Assembly: GCA_009859145.1 (NCBI GenBank)
Contig: VRVR01000019.1
Coordinates: 31,073 to 95,072 of the forward strand
Direction of reading: 5' to 3'
Origin: Andalucia godoyi And28
Taxonomy: Eukaryota; Protista; Jakobida
DNA: 64,000 nucleotides
In this document: in pieces, positions 5,335 to 51,945 of the stretch
How the letters are laid out: the number at the start of each line of letters is the position of its first letter
Numbering within the stretch: the first letter of the stretch is position 1
Made by a program: the position numbers and the translations under genes
The notes under the pieces: generated by a model
The model's database searches: none
Told to the model about the DNA's origin: nothing
What the model saw: only the letters and a program-made list of their open reading frames with translations

Positions 5335-5490
5335 CCTGAGCAGCAAGGCCAGTACACGAAAGAGAGAGAAGAGGAGGACACGAAGCAAGCGGGACAAGAA
5401 CCAGAGCGCAATCAAGCTGGGACTGTGGGAGTATTCTAAATTTTAAGAATGAAAAATGTGACGACACAAACCCCCTCCTGAGGATTGGGA

Positions 5491-7136: not shown

Positions 7137-7285
7137 GGAATTTGCCGACGAACCCCAAACGAAATTTGAAATGCCGGTTATTATTTTCTTCAGAAGAACG
7201 GGGTCAGTCCTCACTAAAATTATTTTCGAAGCAGGTTTTCTTCAGTTTTTGGTTTCGACATTTCTACGTGATACCGGCAAAGGAA
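7137..7285. repeat. Degenerate third copy (C) of the foldback repeat
   Basis: 7199-7229 matches copy B 5600-5630 at 22/31 ungapped. It retains ggaattt-ccg and aaatgccgg, and tttgccg (7141-7147) pairs with cggcaaa (7275-7281). Confidence 0.55.
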
Positions 7286-7924: not shown

Positions 7925-8659
7925 TCAACAAACAGAACAACCTTGGACAACCAGTCGATTACTTAGGACTACACGGGATCTTTCTTCTGCGTGAGCTTCG
8001 CCTTCCGTCGAAAGCAAGTCGTCCAGACATTTTGATACGTCTTTGTGAATAATACAGTTATCACGAGATCGTATTTCAATGAGAACTTCAAATACAGGAC
8101 GAACAACACGTTGCTGGATCATTTTCTTCTCCCGCTTCTCTGCAGTGCGTTCATGATGTGAAAGAGTAACAGTTCCCAATTCTCCGACAAGAAGAGAAAG
8201 CTCGGGATTATTCATAATGGACAAAATAGTCTCACCATGCGCACTCGCGATCATCTGCACTCCACGATCGCGGATCGCAGATGCAGCTTGACATTGCTTG
8301 CGAGTACTAATCTCGTCGATGGGAATCGTCTCCACACTATGATTTTCCACAGCTGCTAACATGCATTCATGAAGTAGTTCTGGCTTCTCAACAGGATATC
8401 GACGAGTCCTTTCTCCAATAGATTTATGCGCTTCATGACCGATACCACCAATTTCATTGGTGGTGTCAACCACCATGGTTCGCCGATGCAAGAAATCGCC
8501 CAAAATGCGGGAGAACTCTCGAAGACATGTGGTTTTTCCGAAACCACCCTTAGCAACAAACAAAATACTTTTCCCGCTCAAGATGAGGTCCGGAATAAGG
8601 TCAAGGCATCCGAACTGCAGCTTACTGAAACGCAGAGTCATTCCAACATACTCACCATC
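7925..8659 (-). pseudogene. ycf45: 5'-truncated Ycf45/SpoIIIAA-like AAA ATPase
   Basis: Motifs GKSILF-AKGGFGKTT, VVDTTNEIGG, AVENH, IDEIST, RGVQMIASAHG and NPELSLLVG match the Ycf45 core. The N-terminal part is missing: two in-frame stops precede DGEYVGMTLR. Walker A (G to A) and Walker B (IPIDE) are altered. Confidence 0.7.
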
Positions 8660-9220
8660 TCACTATTGAATAAAAATGTCACCATTACATCACCAAGTCG
8701 TCATCATTTTCTTTTACTCTACCACATGCAGGCATCACCAAAGCGTGCTCCGGGTATACACGGTGACGCCACAATCGCACCAAATAGTGCACTTCTTTCG
8801 CGTGTTCCACATCACCTATGCATCATGCTGAGCAACTTTTTTTAATTATTCTTCCTGATGTACATCCTGTTGGTCCGCTCGTCTCCTACAAATGGTGTCC
8901 ATCTGGCCTTTGCACAAGTACAGGGTTTTCTTCGTTTACCCACGCCGATGGAACCAATCGAATGCAACTGAGCTTGTGCCACTGCATCTCATCGGCGCAC
9001 ATATCGTTCTACAAGAAAGAACGCGCGGGCGGGCTCACCTTGTTCTGGAGCTGTCCCGCCATCCGACCTCTATCGAAGGGGTTGGGTTATACTACTGCAA
9101 ATTTGGCTACTTTTTTTTTACAATTAAAATAATTGTTTTCAAAGGATGTTCTATGATTATTAATGAGACGTCACGAGGGCATCTCGGAAAAAATTCGGTG
9201 ACATTTTTATTCAATAGTGA
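8660..9220. mobile_element. Candidate non-autonomous DNA transposon delimited by a perfect 24-bp inverted repeat with CACTA...TAGTG ends
   Basis: tcactattgaataaaaatgtcacc (8660-8683) is the exact reverse complement of ggtgacatttttattcaatagtga (9197-9220). No target-site duplication and no transposase seen. Confidence 0.5.
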
Positions 9221-9434
9221 CCGGCAGATGAATGACCTGGTGACGATACACGACGCGGTGCTCCACGCGAGCACCGTTGCATCATGTTGCTGCATCTCAG
9301 TCAGCGCTGTTCTTTTCATATATTTACAGAGTACGAAATGGCACAAGGAAAACAAGAACATCGACTCACAGAAGCACATGTGTCGAGAGAGAACAGGGGG
9401 GGGGGGGGGAAGACTAGCACAGCTGGGACATGAC

Positions 9435-9641
9435 TCAGAGCAGCGAGGACTGGCTGCCAGAGGTTGCGGGTGCGGCCTCCCCGTGAACATTCCACATGAG
9501 TATTCCTCCCAAAGACTGCGACTGCACGTAGCTCAGGACAAGCGATGCGTCGGTGTACGAGACAAACGCCTGCGAGTACGACGCCTGGATGCCTGCGGGT
9601 GTCCACTGTCTGTCGTGATACGCTCGCACCCTCGAGACCAT
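9435..9641 (-). pseudogene. Fragment resembling the C-terminal strand of a GH18 chitinase barrel
   Basis: AFVSYTDAS...YVQSQSLGGILMWNVHG resembles the GH18 ISYDD...YV..-LGG.M.W motif, but the spacing is three residues short and no DxxDxDxE motif lies upstream. Confidence 0.4.
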
Positions 9642-9864
9642 GTCACCACCGCACCACTCGTGCTGCTCGAACGTGCCTATTTGTCCGGAAGGGTGACGAT
9701 TCGTTTTGTGCGATTCGGCAACTTGCCATCATTGAATTGGATGTTGGAAAAGAAGAAAAGAAAATATCATGTTAAAGGTGTTCATCGTTATCCGTTGATA
9801 GGGTTGCAGTTCTGTCTCGCGGGAAAATCCCAGATGTGTGCAAGCCGTTCGTGGATTCGGGTAT

Positions 9865-10800
9865 CTAGACAGAAGAAGGGCGAAACGGCGTTCGTAAGGT
9901 CCTGAATGTTGGGCTTCCGTGAGACATACGATTCTGGAGCCACAAAAAGATGCCGACCCCCGTGCTAAAGTACACTCCGAGCATGCGTGTAAACGAAGAC
10001 GCAGCAAGCAGCGTCCTTGGTGCAAAGTACGACGCAACGGCCAGATTGACAAATCGGATGTTGGTAAAGAAAACCGGGGTTGAGAGTGTTGCCACAGACA
10101 GGACGCCTCCGACACCGATCAGAAATGCCAGCCAGTTGAACAACTGGTTGCATCCCTGAGACCCTGACAGGAAGCGGATGACATAGAAAATGGACAAGAT
10201 GAGGAAGAAAGCAGTGCTGAGCGGGAATAACACAACTTGGTCCTGGGCAAGGACGACGTCGACTTTGGGCCCATCAAAAGACGGATAAAACCCACTTGTG
10301 ACAGCGCCCACCAATCCCTCGGTCTCAAAAACCACGCTTCGGAAGTAGCACATTACAATCTTGCAGAATGCAAAGCAGATCTTCAGAAATTTGTGCATGC
10401 CCCCCGATGGGCCTCCGTCGTCAGGGCCATTTGCCATTTCGCCCATCGCCGACACCGCACCGTCGACAGCAAGCGCAATAACGGCGAAGAACAGTGCCGC
10501 ATAGATGTTGAATTTCTGTATCGAGTCTGGGTCCACTTGGATAAAGTGTCCACCGTCCTCGAGGTAGTAAAAGCTCAGTCCGCCGAACTGATCCTTGAAG
10601 TTATCAGGATCATAAGACGAATCAGGATCGAATCCGAGAGTGCACTGAGAGGAAAGGGTCGTTGCGAATTTTGAATCCGGACAATCGACAGTGAACATGG
10701 AACCTTCCTTCACGGTGCCTCCGACAGCAGCGCACAGCAGAATGATGGCCACCAAAGCACTTAGCACGTGCATCACCGCCTTTGCTCCTTTAGTCCCCAT
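9865..10800 (-). CDS. Hypothetical multi-pass membrane protein, 311 aa
   Basis: ATG-initiated ORF with an N-terminal hydrophobic helix, a Cys-containing loop and about five further hydrophobic segments. No family recognised. Confidence 0.65.
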   Translation of the reverse strand: MGTKGAKAVMHVLSALVAIILLCAAVGGTVKEGSMFTVDCPDSKFATTLSSQCTLGFDPDSSYDPDNFKDQFGGLSFYYLEDGGHFIQVDPDSIQKFNIYAALFFAVIALAVDGAVSAMGEMANGPDDGGPSGGMHKFLKICFAFCKIVMCYFRSVVFETEGLVGAVTSGFYPSFDGPKVDVVLAQDQVVLFPLSTAFFLILSIFYVIRFLSGSQGCNQLFNWLAFLIGVGGVLSVATLSTPVFFTNIRFVNLAVASYFAPRTLLAASSFTRMLGVYFSTGVGIFLWLQNRMSHGSPTFRTLRTPFRPSSV

Positions 10801-11638
10801 CTCACGTGCATCCGTTGAATCACGTCATTTGAATACGCAGAGTGAATGAAAGAAGAAGAAAAAGAGTCCACTTCGCGACAAGATGGTGCGCCACCCGCCA
10901 CCCGTCGGCACCTTCGTCCATTGACGTCAGGTGACATAATGTCGCATCGCCCGTGATGCTGTCGATTTGAGCCCTACTCCAATATGAACCATCAATCCAG
11001 CTCCGGTGATGCTTCGGAGAAAACGCGGGAGCGAGTACTGCGGCATTGCAAGCAAAAACTGCTAAGAGACTTCCCGTCTCTTTCTAAATCAGCACCGACC
11101 GGGAAAAATCTGGGCCGAATCGCCAGCACAGCTTCCATTCCAATGATGGATGTGCTCCATTTGGCATTTGCCCTGTCTGCTTTCTGCCTGCTTCTGGCGT
11201 CGCGACAGCCCCGGCACATACCATTTGCCTCGATGCGCCCCACAGAACCCCAGACGCAGAAGCCTCCAAAGCGAAGGGAAGTGAAGCGCGAGAACGTGCT
11301 GTATCGTTCCTGTGCAATGATGGGCACTCAGAAGGACGTCTTTTTTTGCGGACCCCCCTCCCCCGTCCCCCGATCGTTTTAATGTAAACCTTTCTTGTTT
11401 CGTATTCGAGGGCACATGACAAGACAGTGGCTGCGACGAACCAACCCGCTGAGTTTGGCGTCTTCTGAAGCACTCGCAATTTTGCAGATGATTCCAGCAC
11501 GTTTGCTATCCATTTTGCCCACAGCATCTCGCATTCGGGGACATCGACAACGTTCATCCATTGCAACATAGTGCCGACGTCTTTTTCCAATGATCTTTAT
11601 TTCTTCTTTTTTTTTTAAAAAAAAATCGTGTACTACTT

Positions 11639-14600
11639 CTATTGGGTCATCCACGGTGGTATGCACGCCTGTTGTTGGCCCCGCGCTTCCAACATGCCTT
11701 GCACAAACGCAGCAGCGTCAAACTCTTTGAGGTCCTCATAGTCCTCGGTCGTGCATGAATCGCTCTGGACATACTGGAGGGCAGAAATCTTCCCGCTTTG
11801 CGTACCGCGGTGCAAGGCGACTGAGCGAGCCTCCGACTGGATCGCCTTGAGCATCCACACCCGCGCTTGATCAACAGACGAAAATCGCAATGCTTGCGGA
11901 ATCTCGTAGATTGCAAATCCATCCAGTCCGTTGAATCCAAACGAGTTTCCAGCAACGCAGTAGCGCAAACGATCTCCGGTCTGGAGCAAAGTTCCTGCAC
12001 GGAGCCGAGATGGCTGCGTCGCACCGACATGGGTGCTCTTGGTCAGCGTCGCCGAGAACGGAGAGCTCGCCGTGGAGACTTCCAGATTGTTCAAGCCAGG
12101 ATGCGGCAGTGTGCGGCGATGCATGCCGGACATCAGCAGCAAGACGTCCTCGGTAAGCGTGCCTCCCAGGCAGTGACGCAGGTTGTATTTCGGATGCGAC
12201 TCGAATATCCGGACGTTGTCAATTTGCAAAACTCGCTTCATGCCCGCTTCCAAATTTGCAATTTCCGAAATCCACTGTGCCGTGTGAGAAGTTGAGAAGT
12301 TGAGCTGTTCGGCAAGCCGGCTGCTCCTCTCGAGAATGTCGTTGGACGATGCAACACTCGACCGCAGGTCTTCCACCGTCCGGTTGGTGCGCTGCGCAAC
12401 CCACTGCTGCACGGTTTCATTTTCAGCACCCGCACACGATTGCAGCATGCACCAATCAAGGGCTTCCAGGAACGCGCCAATGGCAAAGGACTCGCTCTGA
12501 ATACTATCCCCTCCCGTCCCGGTGCTGTGGCTGCTCATCATGTAAATATCCTTGAGTGTGACGTCTCCAAACAGTCGGGCGTCCCGAAGCCCGTCCACAA
12601 ACACCTTTCGCTGACCAAATCGCCCGACACCAGTCCACGCACGGCTCTTCCCGTCTGGCTCCAACGTTGGACCATCGCTGCAGCATTCAGAAGCGCGGAT
12701 TACAGCAACCGGACGATACCCGTAGCGCTTGACAGCCCATCCTGTAACAAGCATCATGGCACCGGCGCCGACTCCGATCTGGAACTTTGCCACTCGATCG
12801 CGGTCGTGCGGACGACATTGCCGGTGCGGCGGAAACTCCTTTGCATCTGCCTCCGAAGCTTTCAAAAGCGCACCCACTCGATCAAAGGCATTTTGGCATT
12901 CATGGGTACCGCCATCGTCTGAACACGATACGCACATGACCTTTTGCAACGCTGTCGCACGAAGACGATCGACTTCCAACCGCATCGATTCACTGTTGTA
13001 CCGGCCGATCCGCTTTTCCAAGTCCTCTGCTTTCCTCAGTGCAGACCGCATTTGCTGCACTGCGGTCCACAGCGTCTTCTTTGCCGTGGCACACGCTTGC
13101 GGATCATCCGTCGCAGGACCGGTGGCACCAAACTGGTCGCTGGCAGTGCGACCTGCTGCTGCAGATGGGATGGACAGGACGATGCCAAGCTGGCCCACAT
13201 CCATGCCGCGCATGCAATCCTGCTGCTGTCGTCGGATCGTCTCCAGTGCCCCCATTCCGTTCGAAAACAGCACACACACATTCTGAGCGCCGTGTCGCTC
13301 GGTGACTTCGCGGGGCACCAGTCCCATCATTCTGCAGGCCTCTGTGAGCGCAAGCTGTCCCATCAAGATATTGCGGGCATCATGGTCCGCAATCGACAAG
13401 TTGCCCCCGAGTCGTGACCAGTCCAACGGTGGAATATCCGCGACAATTTGCGGTCCAATCGCGTCGATAATCATTCGACTTAATGATGCACCCTCCTTCC
13501 GTGCAAACACTACCTTTTCTCCCAAAACCGAGCGTTCCTCCAGCTGGTATCCACTCTGCAACAGCCGTTCGACGTGGTGGAATACAGAGACATCAAAAGA
13601 ACTGGACGTTTTCTCAAGTTTGCTTGACAATTCAGTGCGAAATCCGAGCAAGATTTCGTCATCTCCAACGTAGTCGTGGTACCTCCTATACTCGTCCGAC
13701 CGCTGACCCGTTCGCACCAGCATGCGAGGGCCAAGATTGGCTCGAATCTGCTTTCCGAACTTGTGCACAACATCATCCAAAGTCATTCCGTCTTCGACCG
13801 CAAGGCCCATAGCGCGAGCAACGTACAAGACACCCAAGAAAGACGGCCAGTCTTCTTCGGAGCGCAGAAAATGGCTCTGCTGCAAGTCCATCACATTGGC
13901 AAAGGACGATATCGCAGAATCTCCCCATGATGACACCATACCCATCCCGACCACGACAATATCCTCGTCGTCAATCATCGGATACGGTGCGTCCGCTCCG
14001 TCCAGTTCATCAATCCAAAAGCCATAATCGACCAGCGATCGAACCTGTCCAACCTCGAAAACATGGCGCTGTTTCTGCACTTCTGGATTGTCTGCCGCAT
14101 TCTCATTGTCCTCCGCATCGTGCATCTCCAAGGCTGCCATGGCATGGGTACGATTCAGAACATGTTGGATGCCTCCTACCACAACCTGGTCAAGACGCAT
14201 GAACCCGCCATCTGCACAGCGACCGATCACATCCTGGTCACCGTACGATGGGTTGAGAAGGGACACCACGATCGCCGCCATATCCGCTCCATCAAACACC
14301 CACAATGGCGTGTCGAACTCTTCCAACGCAACCGATTCGAGCAAGTCAGAGATGTGCTGGAACGATGACATGATGCCTGTTGGTTTGGCAGCCTTGGACG
14401 AACTCACTGCTGCGACACGAGGAACAACTGCTCCCGTGATCAAAGAGATCTCGCGGAGCATCGGGCGTGAAGAGCCATCGCGCGTGTAGTACAGGCCCTC
14501 TGAGTCCCGGCGCATTGCCCATTGACCAGGAGGCATCGATGCCTTTGCAAAAGGGTAGCTGCCGCTGCCTCCAAGCGCAAACTTGTCGTTCGGACTGGAA

Positions 14601-17600
14601 AAGTTCACGACTGTCAGGACTGGCTGGCTGTGCTCGTCCTCGCCTTCACGGTACCATTGGAGGAGCTTTCCAACGGCGTACCGAAATGCCTCCACCAGCG
14701 AGTACATCACGCTGAAAAAGTCCAGGCGCTGGGAGATGGTCCCGTAGTCTTCCGATGCCATTGCATTCATGATAATGTCTGGTTTCCAATCCAGCTGTTG
14801 AAGCGCGCCAACCAGCAAATCGATGTTGGAATAATTCGGTGAAAACGCAGTGGACGCATGGAGAGACGCCCCACACACTGCCCATTCATCCCTCATCTCG
14901 CGCAGTGTGTCCTCCACATCACCAAAGGTCGATCTTGTGGTAATCCAAACATCGGCTCCCAGACTCAGCAACACACAGGCCGTCGGCTTTCCAATCGTGC
15001 CCAAGCCACCCAGCATCAGAACCCTCTTGCCCTTCAGATCCATGCCGCCGGCAACAAGCTTGGATACATCGGACATCGTGTCCGAATCCACGAAATTGGA
15101 ATCCGACCATTGCGACAACACCATCGGCAAAGGCATCGCACGAGGGCGAGATACCCGAGACCCGTCAGACTGCGACTGGATGGTGAACGGCTCCCACCAG
15201 TGAAGATAAACTGCGCAACCATTCTCGAAGTGCTGCAACAAATCACAGCAAACACGCGATCTTGCGACATCCTGACGACTCACGAAAAACTCTCGCAACG
15301 ACGAAAGCCACGCACACCGGGTTTGGTCCATTTGATGGCTTACGTGGCATACCTTGTATCGATATGCATCCGAATCAAACTCAACGTTCTTCGACGATAC
15401 CTCCTCCATCAACCGCAGGGCATTGGCACAGCATGAGTTCAGGTTGGAATGCGACCAGGCTGCGTGAACCCGAGCGGACCATGAATGGGTCATTGCAGAA
15501 ATAAAGCTGGCTGACAACTCGTGGGACAATTTTTCCAACAGCTTCTTGGCATGATGCGCATCAGCAGTGGCGGCATCGTTTCGGATGATGCACCCTGTGG
15601 ACATGTCGAGAATCACAGAGTCTTGTGTGAGCGGCTTGGAAGGAATCGACGAAGCGCCAGCTGCGATTCGCTCCCGGATGGCGTCGTCCACCAGCTTTTT
15701 CAGTGCATCGACATTCACGGCAGAGACAGGAACCGCCGACACCCCATCCTCCGAGATCCCAAGAGGAGCATCCTCCTGGCGTGCGCAATGAACCGTCAGC
15801 TGTTTCCGGAGGCGATCAAAAAGCGCCGTACGAACTTTCCGCAAGTTATCGGATTCCCGTTTGAATTCTGCTTGCGGCTTCCAGTTTTCCACCCGCTTCA
15901 TCAAATAATCCAGATTCTCTGTCGAGGACAACGGATCGACAAGGCGGCAACAGACCTGCTCGTACAGTGTTTGGAAGACTTCGGACTCCACAGTCACCTT
16001 GCCGTCCTTGGCCAAGTCAAAGAATGTCCGTCCACTGACTTGGTGATCATTCATCAAGGACTTATAGCTGCACGAAACATCTTTCCACGGCTGCTCGCCG
16101 TCCTTCGCAGGAGCAGAAGAAAATGCATGATCCCACAAGCGACACATCAGAGAGAAGATTCCGTCCACAGTGCCTCCCTCTAGTTCTTTTGCATCGTGAT
16201 CCGAGGGCGGCACTGCAATGTTCAGGCGATGTCGAATCTGATTGATTAGACCTGTGATTTCCAGCGAGGACAGGTTCAGGTTTGCTAATCGCTTGGAGGA
16301 AACAATGTCCTTCAGTTTGATGGACTCGTTGGTATCCACCAACGACGTGACGATTGCTGCCCACACCAGTGCGGACGGAGAGCCAATCACAGAAAGGTCG
16401 GACAGCAAAGGTGACAACATCGCGGAACCCTTTGCATCGATTCTACAAGTCGACAGCGCCAAATCGATTGCACACCATTGCAGGGGGCTGATGACGGCTA
16501 GGCTTTGCCGGCTTCCTGCTTGGCTTCGCGCGGGAACAGCAGCGGTAGCGGTAGCGGGAGCAGGAGCAGGAGCAGGAGCAAGAGCAGGAGCAAGGGGAGC
16601 AACCAAGTTAGCGGCAACAGTTGCAATGCTCTTCATCTCAGACACAACGGGAACTTCTGAGGGATGCACAGCGTCGGCAGAAGCGGAGATCAGAGTTTTG
16701 ATCAGTGCCTCAAGTCCAATAGACACCGACGCATGCCTGACTTCGGGATCCTGAGAGAAGATTCGGCGCGCCAAGTTGTTCAAGACAGACGATTCACCAA
16801 ACTCTACAAAGCGCAAGACTCCACTTCGTCGAGCTGTCTTCATCACACCGTCCCATTGGACGGACGCAGAATTCATCCCGACAAGCTCTTCAAGAACGTC
16901 TTCTTTCGTGCGCAAAACACGCAAAGATCCGTCTTCATAGCACGGCTTGACAATGGACAGCATTGGAATCTTGGGATTGGAGATGCTTGTGCTGGAAACA
17001 ATGAAGTCCCTCAGTAGCGCTTCCATCGCAACCAACTTTGACGAGTGAAACGCCACATTACCCGGTAGCACCTTCACGATATAATCAAGCGCGCCAAATC
17101 GCTTCACTGCAGCATGCAGAGCGTCCTCATCCCCGGAGATCACCACTTGGGAATAGTCATGCGAAAGACAGTTGATGTTTGCAATTTCCAACACAGAATG
17201 CGCAAACGCGGGCGATGACGCGACGACCTCTTGCAAGGTGTCCAGAACCACCCCAAGATCCATCAGGGACCTCTTGACAACCGAAGCGATTCTGCCTCGA
17301 CAATGTTCCTTCAAGAGCAGCCCCCGCTTGCGAACAATCCGCAAGCTGTCCGTGAGGGACAGCGCGCCACTGATCACAGCCGCTGTGTACTGACCCAAAG
17401 AGTGTCCGACCACATATGCTGGAGGTGGTGCGCCACGCTCTTGCGCGTTCTCAAAGTATGCCACGCATGTCGCAACAATCGCACAAGACGAATTCTCAAC
17501 TTCGTTCAGATACTCCTCATCCGTACGCCGGGACGACTCCTTGTCGCAGACGATCTTGCAAAGACGAGAATCAATCTCATTCAACGCAGATGTAATACGT

Positions 17601-20600
17601 GCTTTCGCGTGGGGAGAAGTTTCACACAGTGAGGAGGCCATGCCGACTCGCTGAGAAGCATTGCCGACAAACATTGCGATACTGGAAAAAGCACGCAGCA
17701 GCAGGGTCCCCTGCACTTTTCGCTTTCCATCAAGCCGAGAAACAACAACGAAGCTGAAGCATTCGATATTATTCTGCAATAAGCGAGAAAATCGGACATC
17801 CAACAACAGCTGCTCTCCGGGTGCCACAGGGCTCACCACAGCGGTCGATTCTCCGAAACCAACAAACCGGTCAATGTGCTCCAATCCGACAAACCCTTCC
17901 AAGAAGAGATGGCCAACGTGCAACAGCAGCAGCCATCCTTGAACAATAACTCCGTCCGCAAGTCCGCATCGATTTGCGAACCGATCGTCAGTGTGCAACC
18001 ACTGACGATCCAGATAATACGACTCCATCATGCTCCGAGAAACAGAAAACTCCTTGCTGAAAACGTGGACATCGAGCGCATCCGACCCTTCCGTGCACAT
18101 GCATTGCTCCAACGAATGCTGCGCGGGCGGCAGATGCTCAAATAACACTTGGCTGCTGCTGAACTGTGAAGGATCCCAACATCTCGATAAGAACTTCGAA
18201 GACAATGTTGCCACCAGCTCTCCTGCGGGCTCCCGGACCACAACGGTCCATATCTGTACTTCGCGCCCTGCTCGGAGGTCCTGTGCCCGAATTACTTGCG
18301 AGAGAACGCGAACCACATCGCCTTCCGCCAACGCAACCCCTGTGCTTTGGAAGGACTGTCCGGAGTGAACGACTCGTGAAAAGTCAATGGCGAACGGGGA
18401 GGTTAGTGCGCATTGTACCAGCGATTTCCAAGCCAGGTGAAGTGCAAAAAATGGATGCACCAGAGCGCTCTTCAAGCGTCGCACAACAAACCTCTTGGAA
18501 GTCGCGCCCATCGACTTGTGAAACCGCAAGACATCGTCCGCAACGACGCGCTCGGTAGTGCCGTCTGCCATATTGCATCCCCAGCACCCCAAGTATGCGG
18601 AGCGCAGATCATCGATCGTCGAGGAGTAGTTGGTGACATCGACGCGCGTGCGGCCCACGATTGAGCGACGCACAGTGTAGGACCATGTTACTGGAAACAG
18701 CCGGCCAGTGGAATCCATAAGATTCCATTGCTCCAGGAAAACGGAACGATGTTCATCAAAGGTAATTTTGATGAGCTCTCGTTTTTCCTTCGAGGAAACA
18801 GAAATTTCGCGGAGAGTACCATCGCTGATCCTAAGGCAGACGACATCGCCGACAAACGTTCGAACAGCAGAGCGCAGCGGATTGCTCACTTTCCTGACTC
18901 CAAACTCAGAAGCAGAGACGCGCTCTTCTGCGATGCCATCTGCGAGATTAAATGTCTTGCGACCTCCAAAGGAGGAGAGGAAGCGAATCCAGTCGTCCGC
19001 TTCAGGCACTGCAACAATCTCGCAAGACCACTCGTGCGCATCGCTGTGAAGAACGCGCACTCCCTGGAGGCGCTTCGCAGCCAGAACAGGATCCCTTCGT
19101 TGGAGCGCATTCTTGGAGAGCTCGATTTCCATCGCCAGTCGATACGATTTCTGCAGAAATTCCAACGCTCGATCGCGAAGGTCCTCTAGAATTTCGTGAG
19201 CCGGCTTCAGCAGGTACTTGAACGGATCCACGCCCTCTGCTGCCAGCGCCAACATCCCCGACCGAATGGATCGGCCTCCAAGAACATAAGACCGCTGAGG
19301 ATCGATGTCCGGCTCCATGATTGCCCATGTTCGGTATGATCGGAAAAGCGAAATGACCTGCTTCCGGCTGAGCCTCGACAGCGCAGCAGCCAGCTTCTCT
19401 TGATCGGAGGACAGCCAGTAAGGCCACACGTCCGTCAACAACGGCTTGTTTCGGCTCTCGTTCCTCTCTGTCAAACTGGCACACCAAAGGCGATGCAGCA
19501 ACTTTCTCTGAGAAACCGGCTCTCTCAAGAACAGCGTCGAAGTGCGCGCCCCAAGCTCCGCCCCAATTGGCTCGTCGCTCCCTTTCGACTCCAGCATGAC
19601 CGTAAGCTCCAGAAGATCTTCAGAGAACGAATTCCGAATCAGATTGATGGACCTGTCGAACTCGCTCTTACACTGCACAAAGGCATCCGCTCCTTCAAAG
19701 GCGGCTTTTGCAAGAAACTCCTTAACTTGGACCGGAGGAGCAGATTCCAAAGCGACTTGCATCAAACTTCCAAGCTGCACACCACCTCGGACAGGCTGGT
19801 TAGCCATTACCAACAACGCATCAGCAATGGCAGAAGGTGTGCTCTGACCGCCAGTCATGAACCACGGATAGGGCGGCGGCGCAGAATCCAGCAGCGACGC
19901 AGCCAGAGAGTGTCCGTATCGAATCGATGGATTCTGTCGATCAATATTGTGGCCGCCCCCTTCCGCACCCTCTGGAGCGAAGGCAAGCAAATGATGCAAG
20001 GAACGGTCCACCTCGGGATAGATCACATTGCAGAAGTGTTCCCATCTCCTTTCGTTCTCACAGAGAGGGAGAATGGCAATGCCGGCACGCAACAACGGTT
20101 CGTACGTCTCCTTCCAATCCGCCAACGTGATCATGGAAAATGCAACAGACACGATCTTGATGGGAATGCCCTCTTGGACCTTGGCTTGGAGTATGCGCTC
20201 CACCTGCAGCTTGTAGAATCCGCTGGGGTCACCGTGGATGACATTCGCTCCAAAGGGACGTCCCTCTGACCACAAAGGATCGCCCCTACTGTGCAGAAGC
20301 TCCTGTGTGCGACGGTGAATCTCTCGAATCTCTGCAGTCAGTGCTTCCAGATCGCTTCCAAGGGTCGTTGCCGCAAGAAAGCACAAGTATCCGCGAGCCG
20401 CCACAGAAGACACAAGTTCCGCGCGATTGTTTCCTGTCATGGCTGCTACGGCAATGGGAAGTCGGCCGTCGAAGCCGAGGTGATGAAGAAACTCGCTCCA
20501 CAGAGACGGGGTCTCTCCGTCTCCGTCATGAAGGTTCAGCACCTTTTCTACTCTGTTGATGAACTCGCGACGTTGCTCGTCGTCTTGCAAAATCACCGAG

Positions 20601-23092
20601 GAAAGATAAGAAATCGGACCGCTGTACTCACCGTGAATTCGCGGTTCGCCGTGCTTCACTTGATCACAGATTGGACGGCATCCAATCCCCAGAATTTTCT
20701 GAGGATGTCTCCTTTGCAAGAACTCCTCTATGATACCCCGATCGGTTTCATGCAGCAGCGAGGTTCCTTCTGTGCTGTCGAAATGGATCATATTCACGAG
20801 GCACCGATTCAAGCCGTCCGTCGTGATGGCTTCGATAAACTTCCCCACCGCCGTTCCCGGACCGCCATTGAGAACCACAATGGGCTTCTCAAGGAAGCTG
20901 GGTCCCAAAGCACGGAGTGCCGACCACACAGCTATGGGCCAGTCTACTCGGTTCACGCACTGCTCTTCCACCACCACTGCCAGCACCGGATCCAGCAACT
21001 TGCCGTCCTTGAGAATCGCAGGACGTCCCTGCAGAGATCGCATGTCCACTCCATTAGAATTGCAAATGGCGGGCATTCGAAGGCGCTTCATTGATTTGCC
21101 TTCAACGTGCCCCCAGATTTGGCGCAGTGCAGGTTCAACAACCGTGGAGTGAAAGGCCACAGTGGTCGGCAGCACCCGGACTCGAATGTCGGATCTTCCG
21201 AGCTGCTTGACACAGCGGAAAAACTGCTTGATTCCTTCGCAGGTTCCAGAGACGACAACGACGGAAGGAATATCCGCGTTTCCGATCCAACCAGGCGGTG
21301 TCAGTGTTTCCTGGTACACAGAAGACGCCTCCACGTTGATCAGCCCAATTTCAATGACCTCCTCCGCATCCAGCAGTCGACGAACTTCCAGCAAGACGTT
21401 TGTCACTTCTGGCACCGATAGGCCCACAATGCTTGCCATCGACATCTTTCCTGTGAACCGCTCAACAAGGTCAAACTGCTCATCGGATCGTGCCTTGGCA
21501 ATCTGACTCAGCGTCAGGTCATCTCCTGATTCTGGATCCCACCAGCTATCGACCTCCTGCATGTACCGGCCGTTTCTGACGAGCAAATCCAAAACATCGT
21601 CGTCCTCCACAGCCCCAACAGCATGGAGAACGAGCATCTGGCCTTGCGAATGTCCAAGAACAACTGCCTTGGACAGATCATACCCCATCGCCGCCAAGTG
21701 CACATTGATCGCAGCCTGTGTTAGCCCAATTAAAGGCTGCGAAAACTCCGCACGAATGAGTGCGTCTCCATCGTTCTGCATCAAGCCGTCGTCTGTCAGG
21801 ACAAACGATGCGTCGAGGTTGTGGAGTTCGAGGAGTCGCCGCATCTGCGTGTCAATGAAGCGACGCGCGGCAGGAGACGACTTGTGGAGTCTGCGCAGCA
21901 CAGGAACAAACTCGGACGCCTGGCCAGGCAGCGCATAGATGAAGTTCACTTTGTGCTCGTCGATGAGCTGCGCCAGTGCCGGTTTCGGTTCGGAGGCAGC
22001 TTGAAACAGCGAGCTGTCCTTTGCGATCAGGACCCAACCAATCACAAACGTTGTTGCATCTGCATTGTCTGAGGAGCACCACGACGCGGCAGCGGCACAC
22101 CCGTTGCCGCCCTCTCTTTCAACAAGGCACTTCATGGCATCTGCAGAAGATCCAGAGACGTCCAAGACTGCCGACGTGGCTGACAAAGACCGTGCAATGC
22201 GCACATGGTCATACACGTTCGCCATGAAATGCGGCTGTTGTCCTCCACCATAGTACGTAGCCTTGTAGAGACACTCTGCCAAACAGTGTTTCCAGACTGC
22301 ATTGTCATGGTCAAGCTGTGACGAACCGCTATGGTGATCTGCAGACGAGCGCACGACATCAATGCCGATACCAGCAAACGGGCATGTCGACGGAGCGACT
22401 GGAACAACCACCACTGCGATTCCCATGTTCCCATCATCTGCAAACGACGCAAGCAAGTCGCGACCACATTGGAGACTGTGGTTTCCGAATCGAACTGCGC
22501 GCTGGTACTGCGGCCTTGCGCTCGCTCCTTTGAATTCTCGTGCGTACTCGATGTCGCTCCAATTCGGGCTCTCTCCCAGCGACGATGCGAACGCCTCTTT
22601 TAACGCCACCTTGATCGACATTAGCCCTGCGATCCGCGAGTACAGCTTTCCATCTAACACCACCCGCACGCCCCCATCATCTCCACCATCATCATCATCA
22701 TCATCATTCTCATCACCCCCATCTTCAGCCTGACCTCGGTCCTGGCGGTCGGCGAGTCTGGAGCAGTACTCGCCGAGGTTGTCGAGGTTGCGCTCGGTGC
22801 GCGAAAACACCCTGCACAGCGACCGTTTGGGAATCGCAGTCCGTGGCGGCACATGTGCAGCCGCGAGTCCAAACCCGCTAAACGCGACTGCAACAACAAT
22901 CCGCGCGATCCCGAGCGCACTGTCCGGCGGCACAAACGACTGTACATGATGCAGCCCATCTCCCGCACTCGCACTCGCACCGTCGTCTCTGGATGCGATG
23001 CGCGGCCACAGAAGCGCAAACAGCGATGACTTCCACATCTTGCAAACCAGCGCTTCGGCAAGATCGGCGTCCTTTTGCGGCTCGAATGTCAT
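11639..23092 (-). CDS. fas: Single-chain microbial/fungal-type type I fatty acid synthase with N-terminal PPTase (PPT-AT-ER-DH-MPT-ACP-KR-KS), 3817 aa
   Basis: Intronless ORF with ordered motifs: GIGIDVV/LAECLYKA (PPT), LPGQ and GHSQG (AT), EGAEGGGH (FMN-type ER), DRQWLHTD...GVIVQG (MaoC DH), GHSLGQY and AFHS (MPT), LNLSSLEI (ACP), GGLGTIG and SPN...GGSGSYPFAK (KR), QACAT, SHSTGT and RHCLGG (KS Cys-His-His). Confidence 0.92.
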   Translation of the reverse strand: MTFEPQKDADLAEALVCKMWKSSLFALLWPRIASRDDGASASAGDGLHHVQSFVPPDSALGIARIVVAVAFSGFGLAAAHVPPRTAIPKRSLCRVFSRTERNLDNLGEYCSRLADRQDRGQAEDGGDENDDDDDDGGDDGGVRVVLDGKLYSRIAGLMSIKVALKEAFASSLGESPNWSDIEYAREFKGASARPQYQRAVRFGNHSLQCGRDLLASFADDGNMGIAVVVVPVAPSTCPFAGIGIDVVRSSADHHSGSSQLDHDNAVWKHCLAECLYKATYYGGGQQPHFMANVYDHVRIARSLSATSAVLDVSGSSADAMKCLVEREGGNGCAAAASWCSSDNADATTFVIGWVLIAKDSSLFQAASEPKPALAQLIDEHKVNFIYALPGQASEFVPVLRRLHKSSPAARRFIDTQMRRLLELHNLDASFVLTDDGLMQNDGDALIRAEFSQPLIGLTQAAINVHLAAMGYDLSKAVVLGHSQGQMLVLHAVGAVEDDDVLDLLVRNGRYMQEVDSWWDPESGDDLTLSQIAKARSDEQFDLVERFTGKMSMASIVGLSVPEVTNVLLEVRRLLDAEEVIEIGLINVEASSVYQETLTPPGWIGNADIPSVVVVSGTCEGIKQFFRCVKQLGRSDIRVRVLPTTVAFHSTVVEPALRQIWGHVEGKSMKRLRMPAICNSNGVDMRSLQGRPAILKDGKLLDPVLAVVVEEQCVNRVDWPIAVWSALRALGPSFLEKPIVVLNGGPGTAVGKFIEAITTDGLNRCLVNMIHFDSTEGTSLLHETDRGIIEEFLQRRHPQKILGIGCRPICDQVKHGEPRIHGEYSGPISYLSSVILQDDEQRREFINRVEKVLNLHDGDGETPSLWSEFLHHLGFDGRLPIAVAAMTGNNRAELVSSVAARGYLCFLAATTLGSDLEALTAEIREIHRRTQELLHSRGDPLWSEGRPFGANVIHGDPSGFYKLQVERILQAKVQEGIPIKIVSVAFSMITLADWKETYEPLLRAGIAILPLCENERRWEHFCNVIYPEVDRSLHHLLAFAPEGAEGGGHNIDRQNPSIRYGHSLAASLLDSAPPPYPWFMTGGQSTPSAIADALLVMANQPVRGGVQLGSLMQVALESAPPVQVKEFLAKAAFEGADAFVQCKSEFDRSINLIRNSFSEDLLELTVMLESKGSDEPIGAELGARTSTLFLREPVSQRKLLHRLWCASLTERNESRNKPLLTDVWPYWLSSDQEKLAAALSRLSRKQVISLFRSYRTWAIMEPDIDPQRSYVLGGRSIRSGMLALAAEGVDPFKYLLKPAHEILEDLRDRALEFLQKSYRLAMEIELSKNALQRRDPVLAAKRLQGVRVLHSDAHEWSCEIVAVPEADDWIRFLSSFGGRKTFNLADGIAEERVSASEFGVRKVSNPLRSAVRTFVGDVVCLRISDGTLREISVSSKEKRELIKITFDEHRSVFLEQWNLMDSTGRLFPVTWSYTVRRSIVGRTRVDVTNYSSTIDDLRSAYLGCWGCNMADGTTERVVADDVLRFHKSMGATSKRFVVRRLKSALVHPFFALHLAWKSLVQCALTSPFAIDFSRVVHSGQSFQSTGVALAEGDVVRVLSQVIRAQDLRAGREVQIWTVVVREPAGELVATLSSKFLSRCWDPSQFSSSQVLFEHLPPAQHSLEQCMCTEGSDALDVHVFSKEFSVSRSMMESYYLDRQWLHTDDRFANRCGLADGVIVQGWLLLLHVGHLFLEGFVGLEHIDRFVGFGESTAVVSPVAPGEQLLLDVRFSRLLQNNIECFSFVVVSRLDGKRKVQGTLLLRAFSSIAMFVGNASQRVGMASSLCETSPHAKARITSALNEIDSRLCKIVCDKESSRRTDEEYLNEVENSSCAIVATCVAYFENAQERGAPPPAYVVGHSLGQYTAAVISGALSLTDSLRIVRKRGLLLKEHCRGRIASVVKRSLMDLGVVLDTLQEVVASSPAFAHSVLEIANINCLSHDYSQVVISGDEDALHAAVKRFGALDYIVKVLPGNVAFHSSKLVAMEALLRDFIVSSTSISNPKIPMLSIVKPCYEDGSLRVLRTKEDVLEELVGMNSASVQWDGVMKTARRSGVLRFVEFGESSVLNNLARRIFSQDPEVRHASVSIGLEALIKTLISASADAVHPSEVPVVSEMKSIATVAANLVAPLAPALAPAPAPAPATATAAVPARSQAGSRQSLAVISPLQWCAIDLALSTCRIDAKGSAMLSPLLSDLSVIGSPSALVWAAIVTSLVDTNESIKLKDIVSSKRLANLNLSSLEITGLINQIRHRLNIAVPPSDHDAKELEGGTVDGIFSLMCRLWDHAFSSAPAKDGEQPWKDVSCSYKSLMNDHQVSGRTFFDLAKDGKVTVESEVFQTLYEQVCCRLVDPLSSTENLDYLMKRVENWKPQAEFKRESDNLRKVRTALFDRLRKQLTVHCARQEDAPLGISEDGVSAVPVSAVNVDALKKLVDDAIRERIAAGASSIPSKPLTQDSVILDMSTGCIIRNDAATADAHHAKKLLEKLSHELSASFISAMTHSWSARVHAAWSHSNLNSCCANALRLMEEVSSKNVEFDSDAYRYKVCHVSHQMDQTRCAWLSSLREFFVSRQDVARSRVCCDLLQHFENGCAVYLHWWEPFTIQSQSDGSRVSRPRAMPLPMVLSQWSDSNFVDSDTMSDVSKLVAGGMDLKGKRVLMLGGLGTIGKPTACVLLSLGADVWITTRSTFGDVEDTLREMRDEWAVCGASLHASTAFSPNYSNIDLLVGALQQLDWKPDIIMNAMASEDYGTISQRLDFFSVMYSLVEAFRYAVGKLLQWYREGEDEHSQPVLTVVNFSSPNDKFALGGSGSYPFAKASMPPGQWAMRRDSEGLYYTRDGSSRPMLREISLITGAVVPRVAAVSSSKAAKPTGIMSSFQHISDLLESVALEEFDTPLWVFDGADMAAIVVSLLNPSYGDQDVIGRCADGGFMRLDQVVVGGIQHVLNRTHAMAALEMHDAEDNENAADNPEVQKQRHVFEVGQVRSLVDYGFWIDELDGADAPYPMIDDEDIVVVGMGMVSSWGDSAISSFANVMDLQQSHFLRSEEDWPSFLGVLYVARAMGLAVEDGMTLDDVVHKFGKQIRANLGPRMLVRTGQRSDEYRRYHDYVGDDEILLGFRTELSSKLEKTSSSFDVSVFHHVERLLQSGYQLEERSVLGEKVVFARKEGASLSRMIIDAIGPQIVADIPPLDWSRLGGNLSIADHDARNILMGQLALTEACRMMGLVPREVTERHGAQNVCVLFSNGMGALETIRRQQQDCMRGMDVGQLGIVLSIPSAAAGRTASDQFGATGPATDDPQACATAKKTLWTAVQQMRSALRKAEDLEKRIGRYNSESMRLEVDRLRATALQKVMCVSCSDDGGTHECQNAFDRVGALLKASEADAKEFPPHRQCRPHDRDRVAKFQIGVGAGAMMLVTGWAVKRYGYRPVAVIRASECCSDGPTLEPDGKSRAWTGVGRFGQRKVFVDGLRDARLFGDVTLKDIYMMSSHSTGTGGDSIQSESFAIGAFLEALDWCMLQSCAGAENETVQQWVAQRTNRTVEDLRSSVASSNDILERSSRLAEQLNFSTSHTAQWISEIANLEAGMKRVLQIDNVRIFESHPKYNLRHCLGGTLTEDVLLLMSGMHRRTLPHPGLNNLEVSTASSPFSATLTKSTHVGATQPSRLRAGTLLQTGDRLRYCVAGNSFGFNGLDGFAIYEIPQALRFSSVDQARVWMLKAIQSEARSVALHRGTQSGKISALQYVQSDSCTTEDYEDLKEFDAAAFVQGMLEARGQQQACIPPWMTQ

Positions 23093-51913: not shown

Positions 51914-51945
<32 letters not shown>

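What the first reader, a model, noticed from the sequence alone, without database searches (positions are those of the whole stretch)
11639..23092. Fungal/mycobacterial-type single-chain FAS I in a probable flagellated protist
Seen: one intronless 3817-aa ORF with the order AT-ER-DH-MPT-ACP-KR-KS and apparently complete catalytic motifs (GHSQG, FMN-type ER GGGH, MaoC-type His, GHSLG, KR Tyr, KS Cys-His-His). Known: this order defines the barrel-forming FAS I of fungi and corynebacteria/mycobacteria and differs from animal FAS/PKS (KS-AT-DH-ER-KR-ACP-TE). It has been noted only sporadically elsewhere. The sequence is very divergent (for example GNASQ for GQGSQ in MPT). Inference: a distinct branch informative for the origin of the FAS barrel, possibly laterally acquired, possibly making unusual lipids.
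Basis: partly seen in the sequence, partly recalled or inferred. Interest (0 to 1): 0.75.

Follow-up and report, generated by a model that had tools for sequence, protein, structure and literature searches.

The report
Bacterial-type giant fatty acid synthase in jakobid
The flagellate Andalucia godoyi carries one intact 3817-residue gene for a barrel-type (fungal/mycobacterial-style) fatty acid synthase from a very divergent, undescribed family otherwise seen only in a few uncultured bacteria, with an extra activating-enzyme-like domain at its front end.

Summary
Window 11639-23092 (-) is one uninterrupted 3817-aa ORF. The domain order is AT-ER-DH-MPT-ACP-KR-KS.

The window is nuclear DNA of the jakobid Andalucia godoyi. 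The gene lies between ordinary eukaryotic genes and uses their codon usage, so it is not contamination.

The protein is too divergent for Pfam. A profile of its few relatives aligns end to end with canonical bacterial FAS I (hhalign E 7.5e-69). Its best PDB matches are fungal and mycobacterial FAS I.

- An additional N-terminal domain of about 300 aa. Two independent AlphaFold models of it match only phosphopantetheinyl transferases, so the layout is PPT-AT-ER-DH-MPT-ACP-KR-KS.
- Among 1.84 billion representative proteins, only 16 match. Those with readable genomic context are bacterial MAGs (one classified as candidate phylum UBA10199). The nearest relative is of unresolved origin.
- In a tree, the A. 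godoyi gene groups inside this bacterial family. This points to an old bacterium-to-eukaryote transfer.

I found no paper describing this family. The product, the oligomeric state and activity of the PPT domain are untested.

The parts
11639..23092 (-). Whole ORF, 3817 aa, single exon: PPT-like - AT - ER - DH - MPT - ACP - KR - KS
   Evidence: end-to-end hhalign to canonical FAS I
21998..22930 (-). N-terminal domain (aa ~55-365), phosphopantetheinyl-transferase-like fold. Conserved motifs: FT..E, SRIAG..K, W.DIEY, F.xFADDG, GIGID (Asp246), AE..YKATY (Glu273/Lys277). Holds an A. godoyi-specific poly-Asp insertion at aa ~116-146.
   Evidence: Conserved in all A-type relatives from aa 65 onward. 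AF2 model of the A. godoyi domain: top 7 Foldseek hits are Sfp-type PPTases. AF2 model of the bacterial homologue: all top 50 hits are AcpS or fungal FAS PPT, E 1.7e-4, target TM 0.56-0.65. No sequence-level support.
20693..21955 (-). AT, starter (acetyl) transferase, aa ~380-800. Ser482 in GHSQG. Asn507 sits where FabD has the carboxylate-binding Arg.
   Evidence: Pfam Acyl_transf_1. Profile hit to fungal FAS beta AT residues 131-480, E 1.2e-13. FabD alignment shows Asn at the Arg position.
19493..20515 (-). ER, FMN-type (FabK/NMO TIM barrel), aa ~860-1200; EGAEGGGHN with His1048
   Evidence: NMO hit, E 4.6e-4. ER profile best PDB hits are FabK 9pl0 3.7e-7, 4iql 1.9e-6, 7l00 9.8e-5, then NMO and DfnA ER. 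Motif aligned to EGGKAGGHH of canonical FAS I.
18653..19492 (-). Inter-domain helical region, aa ~1201-1480; its first ~100 residues align with the end of the canonical Fas1-AflB-like helical domain (which spans aa 1040-1302 and overlaps the ER row above); low alignment confidence
   Evidence: hhalign mapping of P0138 571-902 to aa 1040-1302; confidence 2-5 of 9. No Pfam hit in the A. godoyi protein.
17723..18652 (-). DH, FAS1-type multiple hot-dog dehydratase, aa ~1481-1790; Asp1695/His1700
   Evidence: FAS1_DH_region 1508-1606, 22.6 bits against a cut-off of 22; MaoC 1678-1762. Fungal FAS beta phmmer hits at colinear positions. Contiguous DH-MPT stretch against fungal and mycobacterial FAS.
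16733..17695 (-). MPT, malonyl(/product) transferase, aa ~1800-2120; GNASQ 1810, Ser1898 in GHSLG, Arg1923
   Evidence: Acyl_transf_1 2.8e-31 and fabD model 1.1e-47; FabD 2cuy 3.6e-26; hhalign confidence 9 at the motifs
16100..16468 (-). ACP, aa 2209-2331, with a type-II-like LNLSSLE motif; Ser2276 is the likely phosphopantetheine site
   Evidence: PP-binding E 0.007 in A. godoyi and 2.4e-4 in P0125. The ACP profile's only two best PDB hits are ACPs, with DSL aligned. The unit is tandemly duplicated in bacterial relatives.
15056..16099 (-). Post-ACP region, aa 2332-2679, mostly helical by sequence; function not assigned
   Evidence: Aligned with low to medium confidence to P0138 ~1941-2311
14093..15055 (-). 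KR, aa ~2680-3000; GGLGTIG 2695, VWITTRS, Tyr2846-x3-Lys2850
   Evidence: Profile hits to the KR of fungal FAS alpha (7bc4_A 9.1e-8, 4v58_A 3.6e-7, 2uv8_A 1.6e-5) and to FabG; hhalign confidence 9
11933..13975 (-). KS, aa ~3040-3720; Cys3334 (ACAT), His3522 (HSTGT), Lys3635, His3640
   Evidence: ketoacyl-synt and fabF weak hits. Profile top hit is M. smegmatis FAS I residues 2601-2757, E 2.7e-8, then FabF and KasA. Triad invariant in the family.

Best explanation
The ORF encodes an intact, probably active, iterative type I fatty acid synthase of the microbial (fungal/CMN) architecture. It belongs to a deep-branching family that has not been described.

Inferred mechanism, by analogy with characterised FAS I:
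- AT (no carboxylate-binding Arg) loads an acetyl-type starter onto the single ACP.
- MPT (Arg1923 kept) loads malonyl.
- KS (Cys-His-His) condenses.
- KR (Tyr/Lys), the hot-dog DH (Asp/His) and the FabK-type FMN ER fully reduce each round.
- MPT presumably returns the finished acyl chain to CoA.

An added N-terminal PPTase-like domain would convert the ACP to its holo form in cis. The layout is therefore PPT-AT-ER-DH-MPT-ACP-KR-KS.

The gene is a resident nuclear gene of Andalucia godoyi. Its lineage most likely received it long ago from a bacterium of the group that includes candidate phylum UBA10199, where the family sits in a conserved housekeeping neighbourhood.

Shown here: ORF integrity, domain order, conservation of catalytic residues, full-length colinearity with canonical FAS I, bacterial relatives, and eukaryotic linkage. 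Inferred: enzymatic activity, product, barrel assembly, PPT activity and the direction of transfer.
For: ORF and motifs.

Domain order from weak Pfam hits.

Family profile against PDB:
- Fungal FAS beta 6.4e-48 and mycobacterial FAS I 2.4e-41, with one stretch spanning DH-MPT.
- The KR-KS profile's top hits are M. smegmatis FAS I (2.7e-8) and fungal FAS alpha (9.1e-8).
- ER matches FabK. AT matches fungal beta AT.

Colinearity: hhalign of the family against canonical FAS I gives prob 100, E 3.5e-50 and 7.5e-69, with aa 351-3806 aligned to 3-3257 of a 3267-aa canonical protein. The canonical references are P0138, confirmed by Pfam Fas1-AflB-like_hel at 3e-90, and a Bifidobacterium FAS.

Catalytic residues are invariant across relatives 25-54% identical.

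N-terminal PPTase fold.

Host and linkage: the RIO1 gene in the window is 100% identical to A. godoyi RIO1. Neighbours are eukaryotic genes. RSCU correlation with neighbours is 0.94. The genome is known to be intron-poor (PMC7050145).

Relatives:
- Only 16 hits in 1.84 billion representatives.
- P0125, 42% identical over the full length, lies on a plainly bacterial contig.
- Only about 9 MAGs among 185,579 species carry the family.
- One of those MAGs is GTDB UBA10199.
- NJ tree, 100% bootstrap: (Ag,P0124) is sister to bacterial A-type sequences, inside a family with a bacterial B-type clade.
Against: - No biochemical data exist.
- Identity to canonical FAS I is only about 20%.
- FAS-specific Pfam scaffolding families do not reach threshold in this protein. 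Alignment confidence is low in several inter-domain regions, so barrel assembly is not shown.
- The ACP is of the DSL/PP-binding type, not the fungal two-lobed type. hhalign does not superpose the two serines.
- MPT has GNASQ instead of GQGSQ.
- The PPT assignment rests on two low-confidence models (pLDDT 50-55) and has no sequence-level support.
- The eukaryotic pair is sister to the bacterial A clade, not nested within it, so the tree alone does not prove the direction of transfer.
- The origin of the closest relative, P0124 (Logan run SRR15116022), is unresolved.
Confidence: 0.75

Rival explanations
1. Same architecture but a different job. The enzyme would make a specialised lipid (unusual chain length, a polyketide-like or signalling lipid) or act as an elongase. 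Bulk fatty acids would come from another system.
For: Extreme divergence, including GNASQ in MPT and a DSL-type ACP. The family is very rare. Variants exist with 2-3 ACPs or a relocated ER.
Against: A complete reducing loop with all catalytic residues kept. In bacteria the gene sits among housekeeping genes (thiamine, pABA/folate, queuosine), not in a tailoring cluster. Two family types replace each other at the same locus, which suggests a core function. No thioesterase, methyltransferase or other tailoring domain was found.
Confidence: 0.17
2. The gene is ancestrally eukaryotic (old vertical inheritance in jakobids or Discoba), and the bacteria obtained it from a eukaryote.
For: The A. godoyi/P0124 pair is sister to the bacterial A-type clade, not nested in it. 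Codon usage is fully that of the host.
Against: All other branches are bacterial: B-type, P0132 and canonical FAS I. The bacterial copies lie in a conserved syntenic position across several genomes. No other eukaryotic homologue appeared among 1.84 billion representatives apart from P0124.
Confidence: 0.05
3. The ORF is bacterial contamination or a chimeric assembly, not part of the protist genome.
For: The closest relatives of known context are bacterial. The gene is intronless.
Against: The ORF is contiguous with eukaryotic genes on both sides: mitochondrial carrier, RIO1 100% identical to A. godoyi, PQ-loop, zf-C2HC. GC3 is 0.60 and RSCU correlates at r 0.94 with neighbours, against GC3 of 0.83-0.85 in the bacterial homologues. 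It is only 42% identical to the nearest bacterial protein. The same protein is in the EukProt A. godoyi set. The host genome is intron-poor.
Confidence: 0.01
4. The gene is an inactive relic or a pseudo-enzyme kept for a non-catalytic role.
For: High divergence and several non-canonical motifs.
Against: 11.4 kb of open frame. Every catalytic residue of six enzymes plus the carrier serine is retained and shared with relatives 42-54% identical.
Confidence: 0.02

Closest known systems
Bacterial (CMN-type) FAS I: Mycobacterium tuberculosis/smegmatis Fas, Corynebacterium FAS, Bifidobacterium FAS
   Same: Single chain. Order AT-ER-DH-MPT-ACP-KR-KS. No C-terminal PPT. Similar body length (~3470 vs ~3100-3270 aa). 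End-to-end colinear profile alignment. Best PDB hit of the KR-KS profile.
   Different: About 20% identity. phmmer of aa 701-1800 finds no canonical FAS I except one marginal hit. Extra N-terminal PPTase-like domain. DSL-type ACP rather than Fas_alpha_ACP. GNASQ in MPT. FAS-specific Pfam scaffold families are not detected. Found in UBA10199-type MAGs and a jakobid rather than in Actinomycetota.
Fungal FAS (Saccharomyces Fas1/Fas2, Thermomyces, Chaetomium)
   Same: Same order of catalytic domains. FMN ER. FAS1-type DH. Best PDB hits of the full-length profile (7q5s_B 6.4e-48, 2uv8_G 2.4e-42). KR most like the KR of fungal alpha. A PPTase is integrated in the polypeptide.
   Different: Fungal PPT is a C-terminal AcpS-type domain after KS; here the PPT-like domain is N-terminal, before AT. 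Read as a circle the order is the same (KS-PPT|AT), but the chain ends differ. Fungal FAS is usually two chains with large extra scaffolding. Sequence identity is marginal.
Fungal-type FAS I reported in other protists (Paulinella per PMC11714747; thraustochytrids from my own knowledge)
   Same: A protist carrying a microbial-type FAS I; the thraustochytrid one is a single chain (own knowledge).
   Different: No such sequence appeared among the 16 hits, so the A. godoyi protein is not close to them. I did not compare them directly.
Animal FAS, iterative type I PKS and PUFA synthases
   Same: Iterative multidomain synthases with KS, AT, DH, ER, KR and ACP. AT domains give cross-hits.
   Different: Their order is KS-AT-DH-ER-KR-ACP with an MDR-type ER. 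Here KS is last and the ER is FabK/NMO-type. Only the AT domain matches PKS models.
Type II parts: FabD, FabK, FabF/KasA, FabG, AcpS/Sfp
   Same: Each domain's nearest stand-alone structure: FabD for MPT (3.6e-26), FabK for ER, FabF/KasA for KS, AcpS/PptT for the N-terminal domain.
   Different: Here all are fused in one chain in the FAS I order, with FAS I-type inter-domain regions.

Membership tests
Microbial (fungal/CMN) type I FAS | Domain order AT-ER-DH-MPT-ACP-KR-KS on one chain (or split beta/alpha) | tested here: met
   Ordered Pfam hits; one colinear hhalign alignment, aa 351-3806 to 3-3257 of canonical FAS I, E 7.5e-69
Microbial (fungal/CMN) type I FAS | FMN-dependent FabK/NMO-type TIM-barrel ER (not MDR-type) | tested here: met
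   ER profile: FabK 3.7e-7, 1.9e-6; NMO; DfnA ER. NMO Pfam 4.6e-4. GGGH aligned to the canonical GGHH motif.
Microbial (fungal/CMN) type I FAS | FAS1-type hot-dog DH (FAS1_DH_region + MaoC) with Asp/His | tested here: met
   FAS1_DH_region 22.6 bits (cut-off 22) and MaoC; stronger in P0125, 2.2e-10 and 7.1e-10; fungal beta hits
Microbial (fungal/CMN) type I FAS | Two FabD-like transferases: a starter AT without the Arg, and an MPT with the Arg | tested here: met
   Asn507 at the FabD Arg position in AT (alignment); Arg1923 invariant in MPT. Substrate specificity itself was not tested.
Microbial (fungal/CMN) type I FAS | KS with Cys-His-His(+Lys) and SDR KR with Tyr/Lys, located after the ACP | tested here: met
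Microbial (fungal/CMN) type I FAS | FAS-specific scaffold families reach Pfam thresholds (Fas1-AflB-like_hel, FAS_AT_central, Fas_alpha_ACP and others) | tested here: not met
   None reported for the A. godoyi protein, although the canonical P0138 scores 3e-90. The equivalent regions align only with low to medium hhalign confidence.
Microbial (fungal/CMN) type I FAS | Two-lobed fungal/CMN-type ACP (GGKS/GVSA-type serine) | tested here: not met
   The ACP carries an LNLSSLE (DSL-type) motif and hits PP-binding and stand-alone ACPs. The serines are not superposed by hhalign.
Microbial (fungal/CMN) type I FAS | Hexameric D3 barrel with central wheel | not testable with these tools
   Needs cryo-EM or multimer modelling of a 2.5-MDa assembly
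Microbial (fungal/CMN) type I FAS | Product is long-chain saturated acyl-CoA released by MPT | not testable with these tools
   Biochemistry required
4'-phosphopantetheinyl transferases (AcpS/Sfp superfamily), for the N-terminal domain | PPTase alpha/beta fold | tested here: met
   Model of the A. godoyi domain: top 7 PDB hits are PptT/MuPPT, prob 0.97, E 2e-3. Model of the P0125 domain: all top 50 hits are PPTases, E 1.7e-4, target TM 0.56-0.65. Caveat: pLDDT is 50-55 and the alignment has 3 sequences.
4'-phosphopantetheinyl transferases (AcpS/Sfp superfamily), for the N-terminal domain | Sequence signature: GxD Mg2+ site and (K)E-x3-K helix; a Pfam ACPS hit | tested here: inconclusive
   GIGID and E273-x3-K277 are conserved in five relatives. 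There is no Pfam ACPS hit and no PDB profile hit (AcpS E 1.8). hhalign against Sfp aligns only IGIDI.
Animal FAS / iterative PKS / PUFA synthase | KS-AT-DH-(ER)-KR-ACP order with N-terminal KS and an MDR-type ER | tested here: not met
   KS is C-terminal and the ER is FabK-type. PKS and PfaA models match only the AT domain, far below their cut-offs.

The most novel reading that the evidence does not exclude
This family (A-type, and its B-type and P0132 cousins) would be a third, deep lineage of barrel-type FAS I, alongside the fungal and actinobacterial ones. It would serve as the sole primary FAS of UBA10199-type bacteria. It would show an alternative solution for self-activation: a PPTase fused before AT instead of after KS. 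That makes it a circular permutation of the fungal order and would date PPT recruitment and the barrel scaffold differently from current models. A jakobid would then have replaced or supplemented its own cytosolic fatty acid synthesis with this bacterial machine.
Probability: 0.35. Interest if true: 0.85.

Novelty: new variant of a known kind. Interest (0 to 1): 0.72.

Why it matters
Microbial FAS I is a textbook case of how a 2-3 MDa multienzyme arose from stand-alone bacterial enzymes. So far essentially two lineages inform that question: fungi and the Corynebacterium/Mycobacterium group.

This family adds several things:
- A very distant relative, about 20% identical yet colinear end to end.
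- Minimal recognisable scaffolding and a type-II-like ACP.
- A PPTase-like domain at the opposite chain end.
- Sister variants with tandem ACPs, with a relocated ER, or apparently without an internal carrier.

That gives comparative material for the order in which scaffolds and domains were fused.

It is also a clean example of a giant (11.4 kb) metabolic gene moved from an uncultured bacterial phylum into a free-living, intron-poor protist that is often used as a proxy for early eukaryotes. This bears on how jakobids make fatty acids.

Tried and rejected
- The search for homologous proteins with the full protein timed out.
- The same tool with aa 1465-2131 returned only two weak Streptomyces AT hits and no self hit.
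- With the N-terminal alignment it returned nothing. That word index apparently does not hold these giant proteins, so absence there means little.
- Exact look-up of the 3817-aa product found nothing. The public model starts at Met158.
- phmmer of the single sequence against PDB gave no significant fungal alpha hits. Profiles were needed.
- The PDB profile search with the N-terminal domain gave nothing significant.
- I tried to identify the source of SRR15116022 (P0124) through flank comparison, codon usage and a literature search. All were inconclusive.
- Literature searches for A. godoyi or jakobid FAS I, and for UBA10199 with fatty acid synthase, found nothing relevant.
- Rejected: PKS or PUFA synthase (domain order and ER type), contamination (linkage, codon usage), pseudogene (intact frame and catalytic residues).
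Full report
**The observation.** The window holds one uninterrupted ORF at 11639-23092 on the minus strand. It is 3817 aa long, starts with ATG, and has an in-frame stop directly upstream.

Pfam and NCBIfam on the whole protein recognise only the two acyltransferases with confidence, plus weak MaoC, KS and SDR signals. When the protein is scanned in ten overlapping pieces, the weak hits fall in exactly the claimed order:
- Acyl_transf_1 (aa ~401-515)
- NMO (879-930)
- FAS1_DH_region (1508-1606; 22.6 bits against a cut-off of 22)
- MaoC (1678-1762)
- Acyl_transf_1 (1808-2048)
- PP-binding (2258-2298)
- Rossmann-type (2679-2730)
- ketoacyl-synt (3248-3350)

**Host and linkage.** The RIO1 kinase ORF at 51682-53370 is 100% identical to the nr protein of Andalucia godoyi. 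Other neighbours are ordinary eukaryotic genes: a mitochondrial carrier, a PQ-loop protein, a zf-C2HC protein, a RUS/UVB_sens protein, an EF-hand protein and giant TIG-domain proteins. The synthase gene has GC3 of 0.60, and its RSCU correlates at 0.94 with the other genes of the window. The A. godoyi genome is about 20 Mb, compact and mostly intronless (PMC7050145), so a single-exon 11.4-kb gene is normal there. Contamination is excluded.

**Relatives.** phmmer of aa 701-1800 against 1.84 billion representative proteins found only 16 hits:
- The A. godoyi protein itself, as an EukProt model of 3660 aa that starts at Met158.
- P0124 (4157 aa, 53-54% identical; Logan run SRR15116022).
- P0125 (4193 aa, 42% identical over the full length; MAG 'bacterium' GCA_035454885.1).
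- P0128 and P0141 (about 25%).
- P0132 (4533 aa).
- Several fragments.
- One marginal canonical FAS I, P0138.

The contig of P0125 is plainly bacterial, with a sigma-54 activator, thiamine genes, pabB/pabC-like genes and queG. A pattern scan of one genome per 185,579 prokaryotic species found the family in only about nine MAGs, labelled Deltaproteobacteria, Pseudomonadota or 'bacterium'. One of them, the closed 2.7-Mb genome CP064976, is GTDB p__UBA10199 (SILVA: Myxococcota bacteriap25) according to the supplement of PMC8012365.

Pairwise scores and an NJ tree (2601 columns, 300 bootstraps) give 100% support for several groupings:
- An A-type clade made of (A. godoyi, P0124) plus (P0125, L007p, L005p).
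- A B-type clade (P0128, L009p, L008p, P0141).
- A canonical FAS I clade (P0138, L011p, Bifidobacterium L012p, L016p).

**Homology to FAS I.** A five-sequence family profile searched against all PDB sequences puts FAS I at the top. Fungal FAS beta scores 6.4e-48 (7q5s_B) and 2.4e-42 (2uv8_G). Mycobacterial FAS I scores 2.4e-41 (4v8v) and 1.1e-38 (6gjc). A single stretch runs through DH and MPT.

Domain-wise profiles give:
- AT against fungal beta AT residues 131-480, 1.2e-13.
- ER against FabK, 3.7e-7 and 1.9e-6, then NMO and DfnA ER.
- KR-KS against M. smegmatis FAS I residues 2601-2757, 2.7e-8, and against the KR of fungal alpha, 9.1e-8 (weaker with four sequences).
- ACP: the only two near-hits are ACPs, with the DSL serine aligned.

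P0138 is a canonical FAS I by Pfam (Fas1-AflB-like_hel 3e-90, FAS_AT_central, Fas_alpha_ACP). hhalign of the family against it gives probability 100 and E 3.5e-50. Seven family members against three canonical proteins give E 7.5e-69, with one colinear alignment from aa 351 to 3806 onto residues 3-3257 of 3267. Transferring the canonical Pfam coordinates through this alignment reproduces the independent weak Pfam hits.

Posterior confidence is 8-9 at every catalytic motif. It is low (2-3) in parts of the inter-domain regions: aa 1200-1400 and 2000-2500.

**Catalytic competence.** The following residues are invariant or conserved across relatives 25-54% identical:
- AT: Ser482.
- ER: His1048.
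- DH: Asp1695 and His1700.
- MPT: Ser1898 and Arg1923.
- KR: Tyr2846 and Lys2850.
- KS: Cys3334, His3522, Lys3635 and His3640.

In AT, the position of the FabD carboxylate-binding Arg is Asn507 and is never Arg in the family. MPT keeps the Arg. This pattern is expected for an acetyl loader and a malonyl loader. The ACP carries LNLSSLE, with Ser2276 as the likely attachment site. This is a type-II/PKS-like motif rather than the fungal/CMN one.

**The extra N-terminal domain.** Canonical FAS I aligns only from aa ~351, but aa 65-370 are conserved in all A-type relatives. The motifs are FT..E.N.DNLG.Y, SRIAG..S.KAA, W.DIEYAR, F.xFADDG..G.A.V, GIGID and AE..YKATY.GG. Their order resembles an Sfp-type PPTase, and the Glu-x3-Lys spacing matches the PPTase KE..K helix.

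Sequence methods give no support. Two AlphaFold models do:
- A. godoyi aa 40-385: pLDDT 55, pTM 0.58. The seven best PDB matches are all Sfp-type PPTases (MuPPT, PptT; prob 0.97, E 2e-3), followed by AcpS and the yeast FAS PPT.
- The homologous region of P0125: pLDDT 50, pTM 0.58. All fifty best matches are PPTases. These include AcpS of E. coli, S. coelicolor and V. cholerae, and the PPT domains of Chaetomium and yeast FAS alpha (E from 1.7e-4, prob 1.0, target TM 0.56-0.65).

I take the fold assignment as probable and the activity as open. The architecture is then PPT-AT-ER-DH-MPT-ACP-KR-KS. Fungal FAS has its PPT after KS, and CMN FAS has none. The public gene model starting at Met158 would cut this domain. 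A. godoyi also has a private poly-Asp insertion at aa ~116-146.

**Bacterial context.** In L001, L006+L007 and L018 (A-type) and in L004 and L009 (B-type), the synthase lies between the same genes. Upstream are thiD, an Aminotran_4 gene, a chorismate-binding enzyme, a metallo-beta-lactamase-fold protein and a PALP enzyme. Downstream is a 481-aa protein. The flanking proteins are 58-89% identical between genomes, while the A-type and B-type synthases are only about 25% identical. So one type has replaced the other in situ in fairly close relatives. The neighbourhood is housekeeping rather than a tailoring cluster. I read this as support for a core fatty-acid function, but it is an inference.

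**Direction of transfer.** All other branches of the family, and canonical FAS I, are bacterial. The only eukaryotic lineage is A. godoyi, plus P0124 if that is eukaryotic. P0124's contig has 0.5-kb and 1.2-kb flanks without bacterial-style gene packing, and GC3 of 0.70 against 0.83-0.85 in the bacterial genes. The eukaryotic pair is sister to the bacterial A-type clade, not nested in it. At 42% identity with fully ameliorated codon usage, the event is old. Bacterium-to-eukaryote transfer is the parsimonious reading but is not proven.

**Comparison with what is known, and novelty.** By architecture this is a microbial type I FAS. It fails two membership features tested here: the Pfam FAS scaffold families are not detected, and the ACP is not the fungal/CMN type. 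Barrel assembly and the product cannot be tested here.

I found no paper linking A. godoyi or jakobids to FAS I, nor UBA10199 to a fatty acid synthase. Fungal-type FAS I in other protists is mentioned for Paulinella (PMC11714747). I therefore rate this as a new variant of a known kind: a third deep lineage of FAS I-like megasynthases, with an N-terminal PPTase-like domain, present in a jakobid through an ancient lateral transfer.

Noticed in passing
L001 10001-22582 vs L004 5360-16855 and L009 9245-20836 (related loci): A-type and B-type synthases are only ~25% identical, yet they occupy the same slot between the same flanking genes in genomes whose flanking proteins are 58-89% identical. One FAS I-like type has replaced the other in situ.
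   Followed up: partly
P0128, P0141, L008 9251-20887, L009 9245-20836: B-type proteins lack the N-terminal PPT-like domain and carry a ~250-aa C-terminal extension. They show no ACP detectable with the A-type ACP HMM, and no conserved serine in the aligned region. The carrier may be elsewhere or in trans.
   Followed up: partly
L001 16946-18133; L007 4903-6120: Bacterial A-type proteins have two tandem, nearly identical ACP-containing units (~270-280 aa period). A. godoyi and P0124 have one.
   Followed up: partly
P0132 (JGI metagenome protein, 4533 aa): A variant layout, AT-DH-MPT-3xACP-KR-KS, with the NMO-type ER moved to the C terminus (NMO 4.2e-20 at 4163-4388).
   Followed up: no
L016 1-9027; L017 2-5416: Two other 'Deltaproteobacteria' MAGs (OFTM172, LakeFargette) carry partial giant ORFs that score nearer to canonical FAS I than to the A or B types. 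The group seems to hold several FAS I lineages.
   Followed up: no
window 22619-23092 (aa 1-158): The public EukProt model (P0123, 3660 aa) starts at Met158. Homology to bacterial relatives starts at aa ~65, so the model probably truncates the N-terminal domain.
   Followed up: partly
window 22655-22747 (aa ~116-146): An Asp/Gly-rich insertion (…EDGGDENDDDDDDGGDDGG…) that is absent from all relatives. It sits in a loop of the N-terminal domain.
   Followed up: no
window 32375-43807 (-), 55416-63989 (-): Two giant ORFs (3810 aa and more than 2857 aa) with IPT/TIG domains; the second also has an ephrin-receptor-like repeat. The region 34-38 kb has strong GC skew (-0.28) and 60% GC.
   Followed up: no
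window 26223-31019 (-): A 1598-aa ORF ending in a Peptidase_S74 domain (the intramolecular chaperone of endosialidase), which is best known from phage tailspikes.
   Followed up: no
window 1-11000: Lower GC (0.44-0.48) and only short ORFs, including a ParA/MinD-like P-loop fragment (4806-5411) and a SpoIIIAA-like ATPase fragment (7925-8641). These are possibly intron-containing genes.
   Followed up: no
L003 10001-21718 (CP064976): In the closed UBA10199 genome the B-type synthase is called as four consecutive ORFs (1842+1100+559+391 aa), while a Logan assembly has it as one 3905-aa protein (P0141). The split is probably due to long-read frameshift errors. L018 is similarly fragmented.
   Followed up: partly
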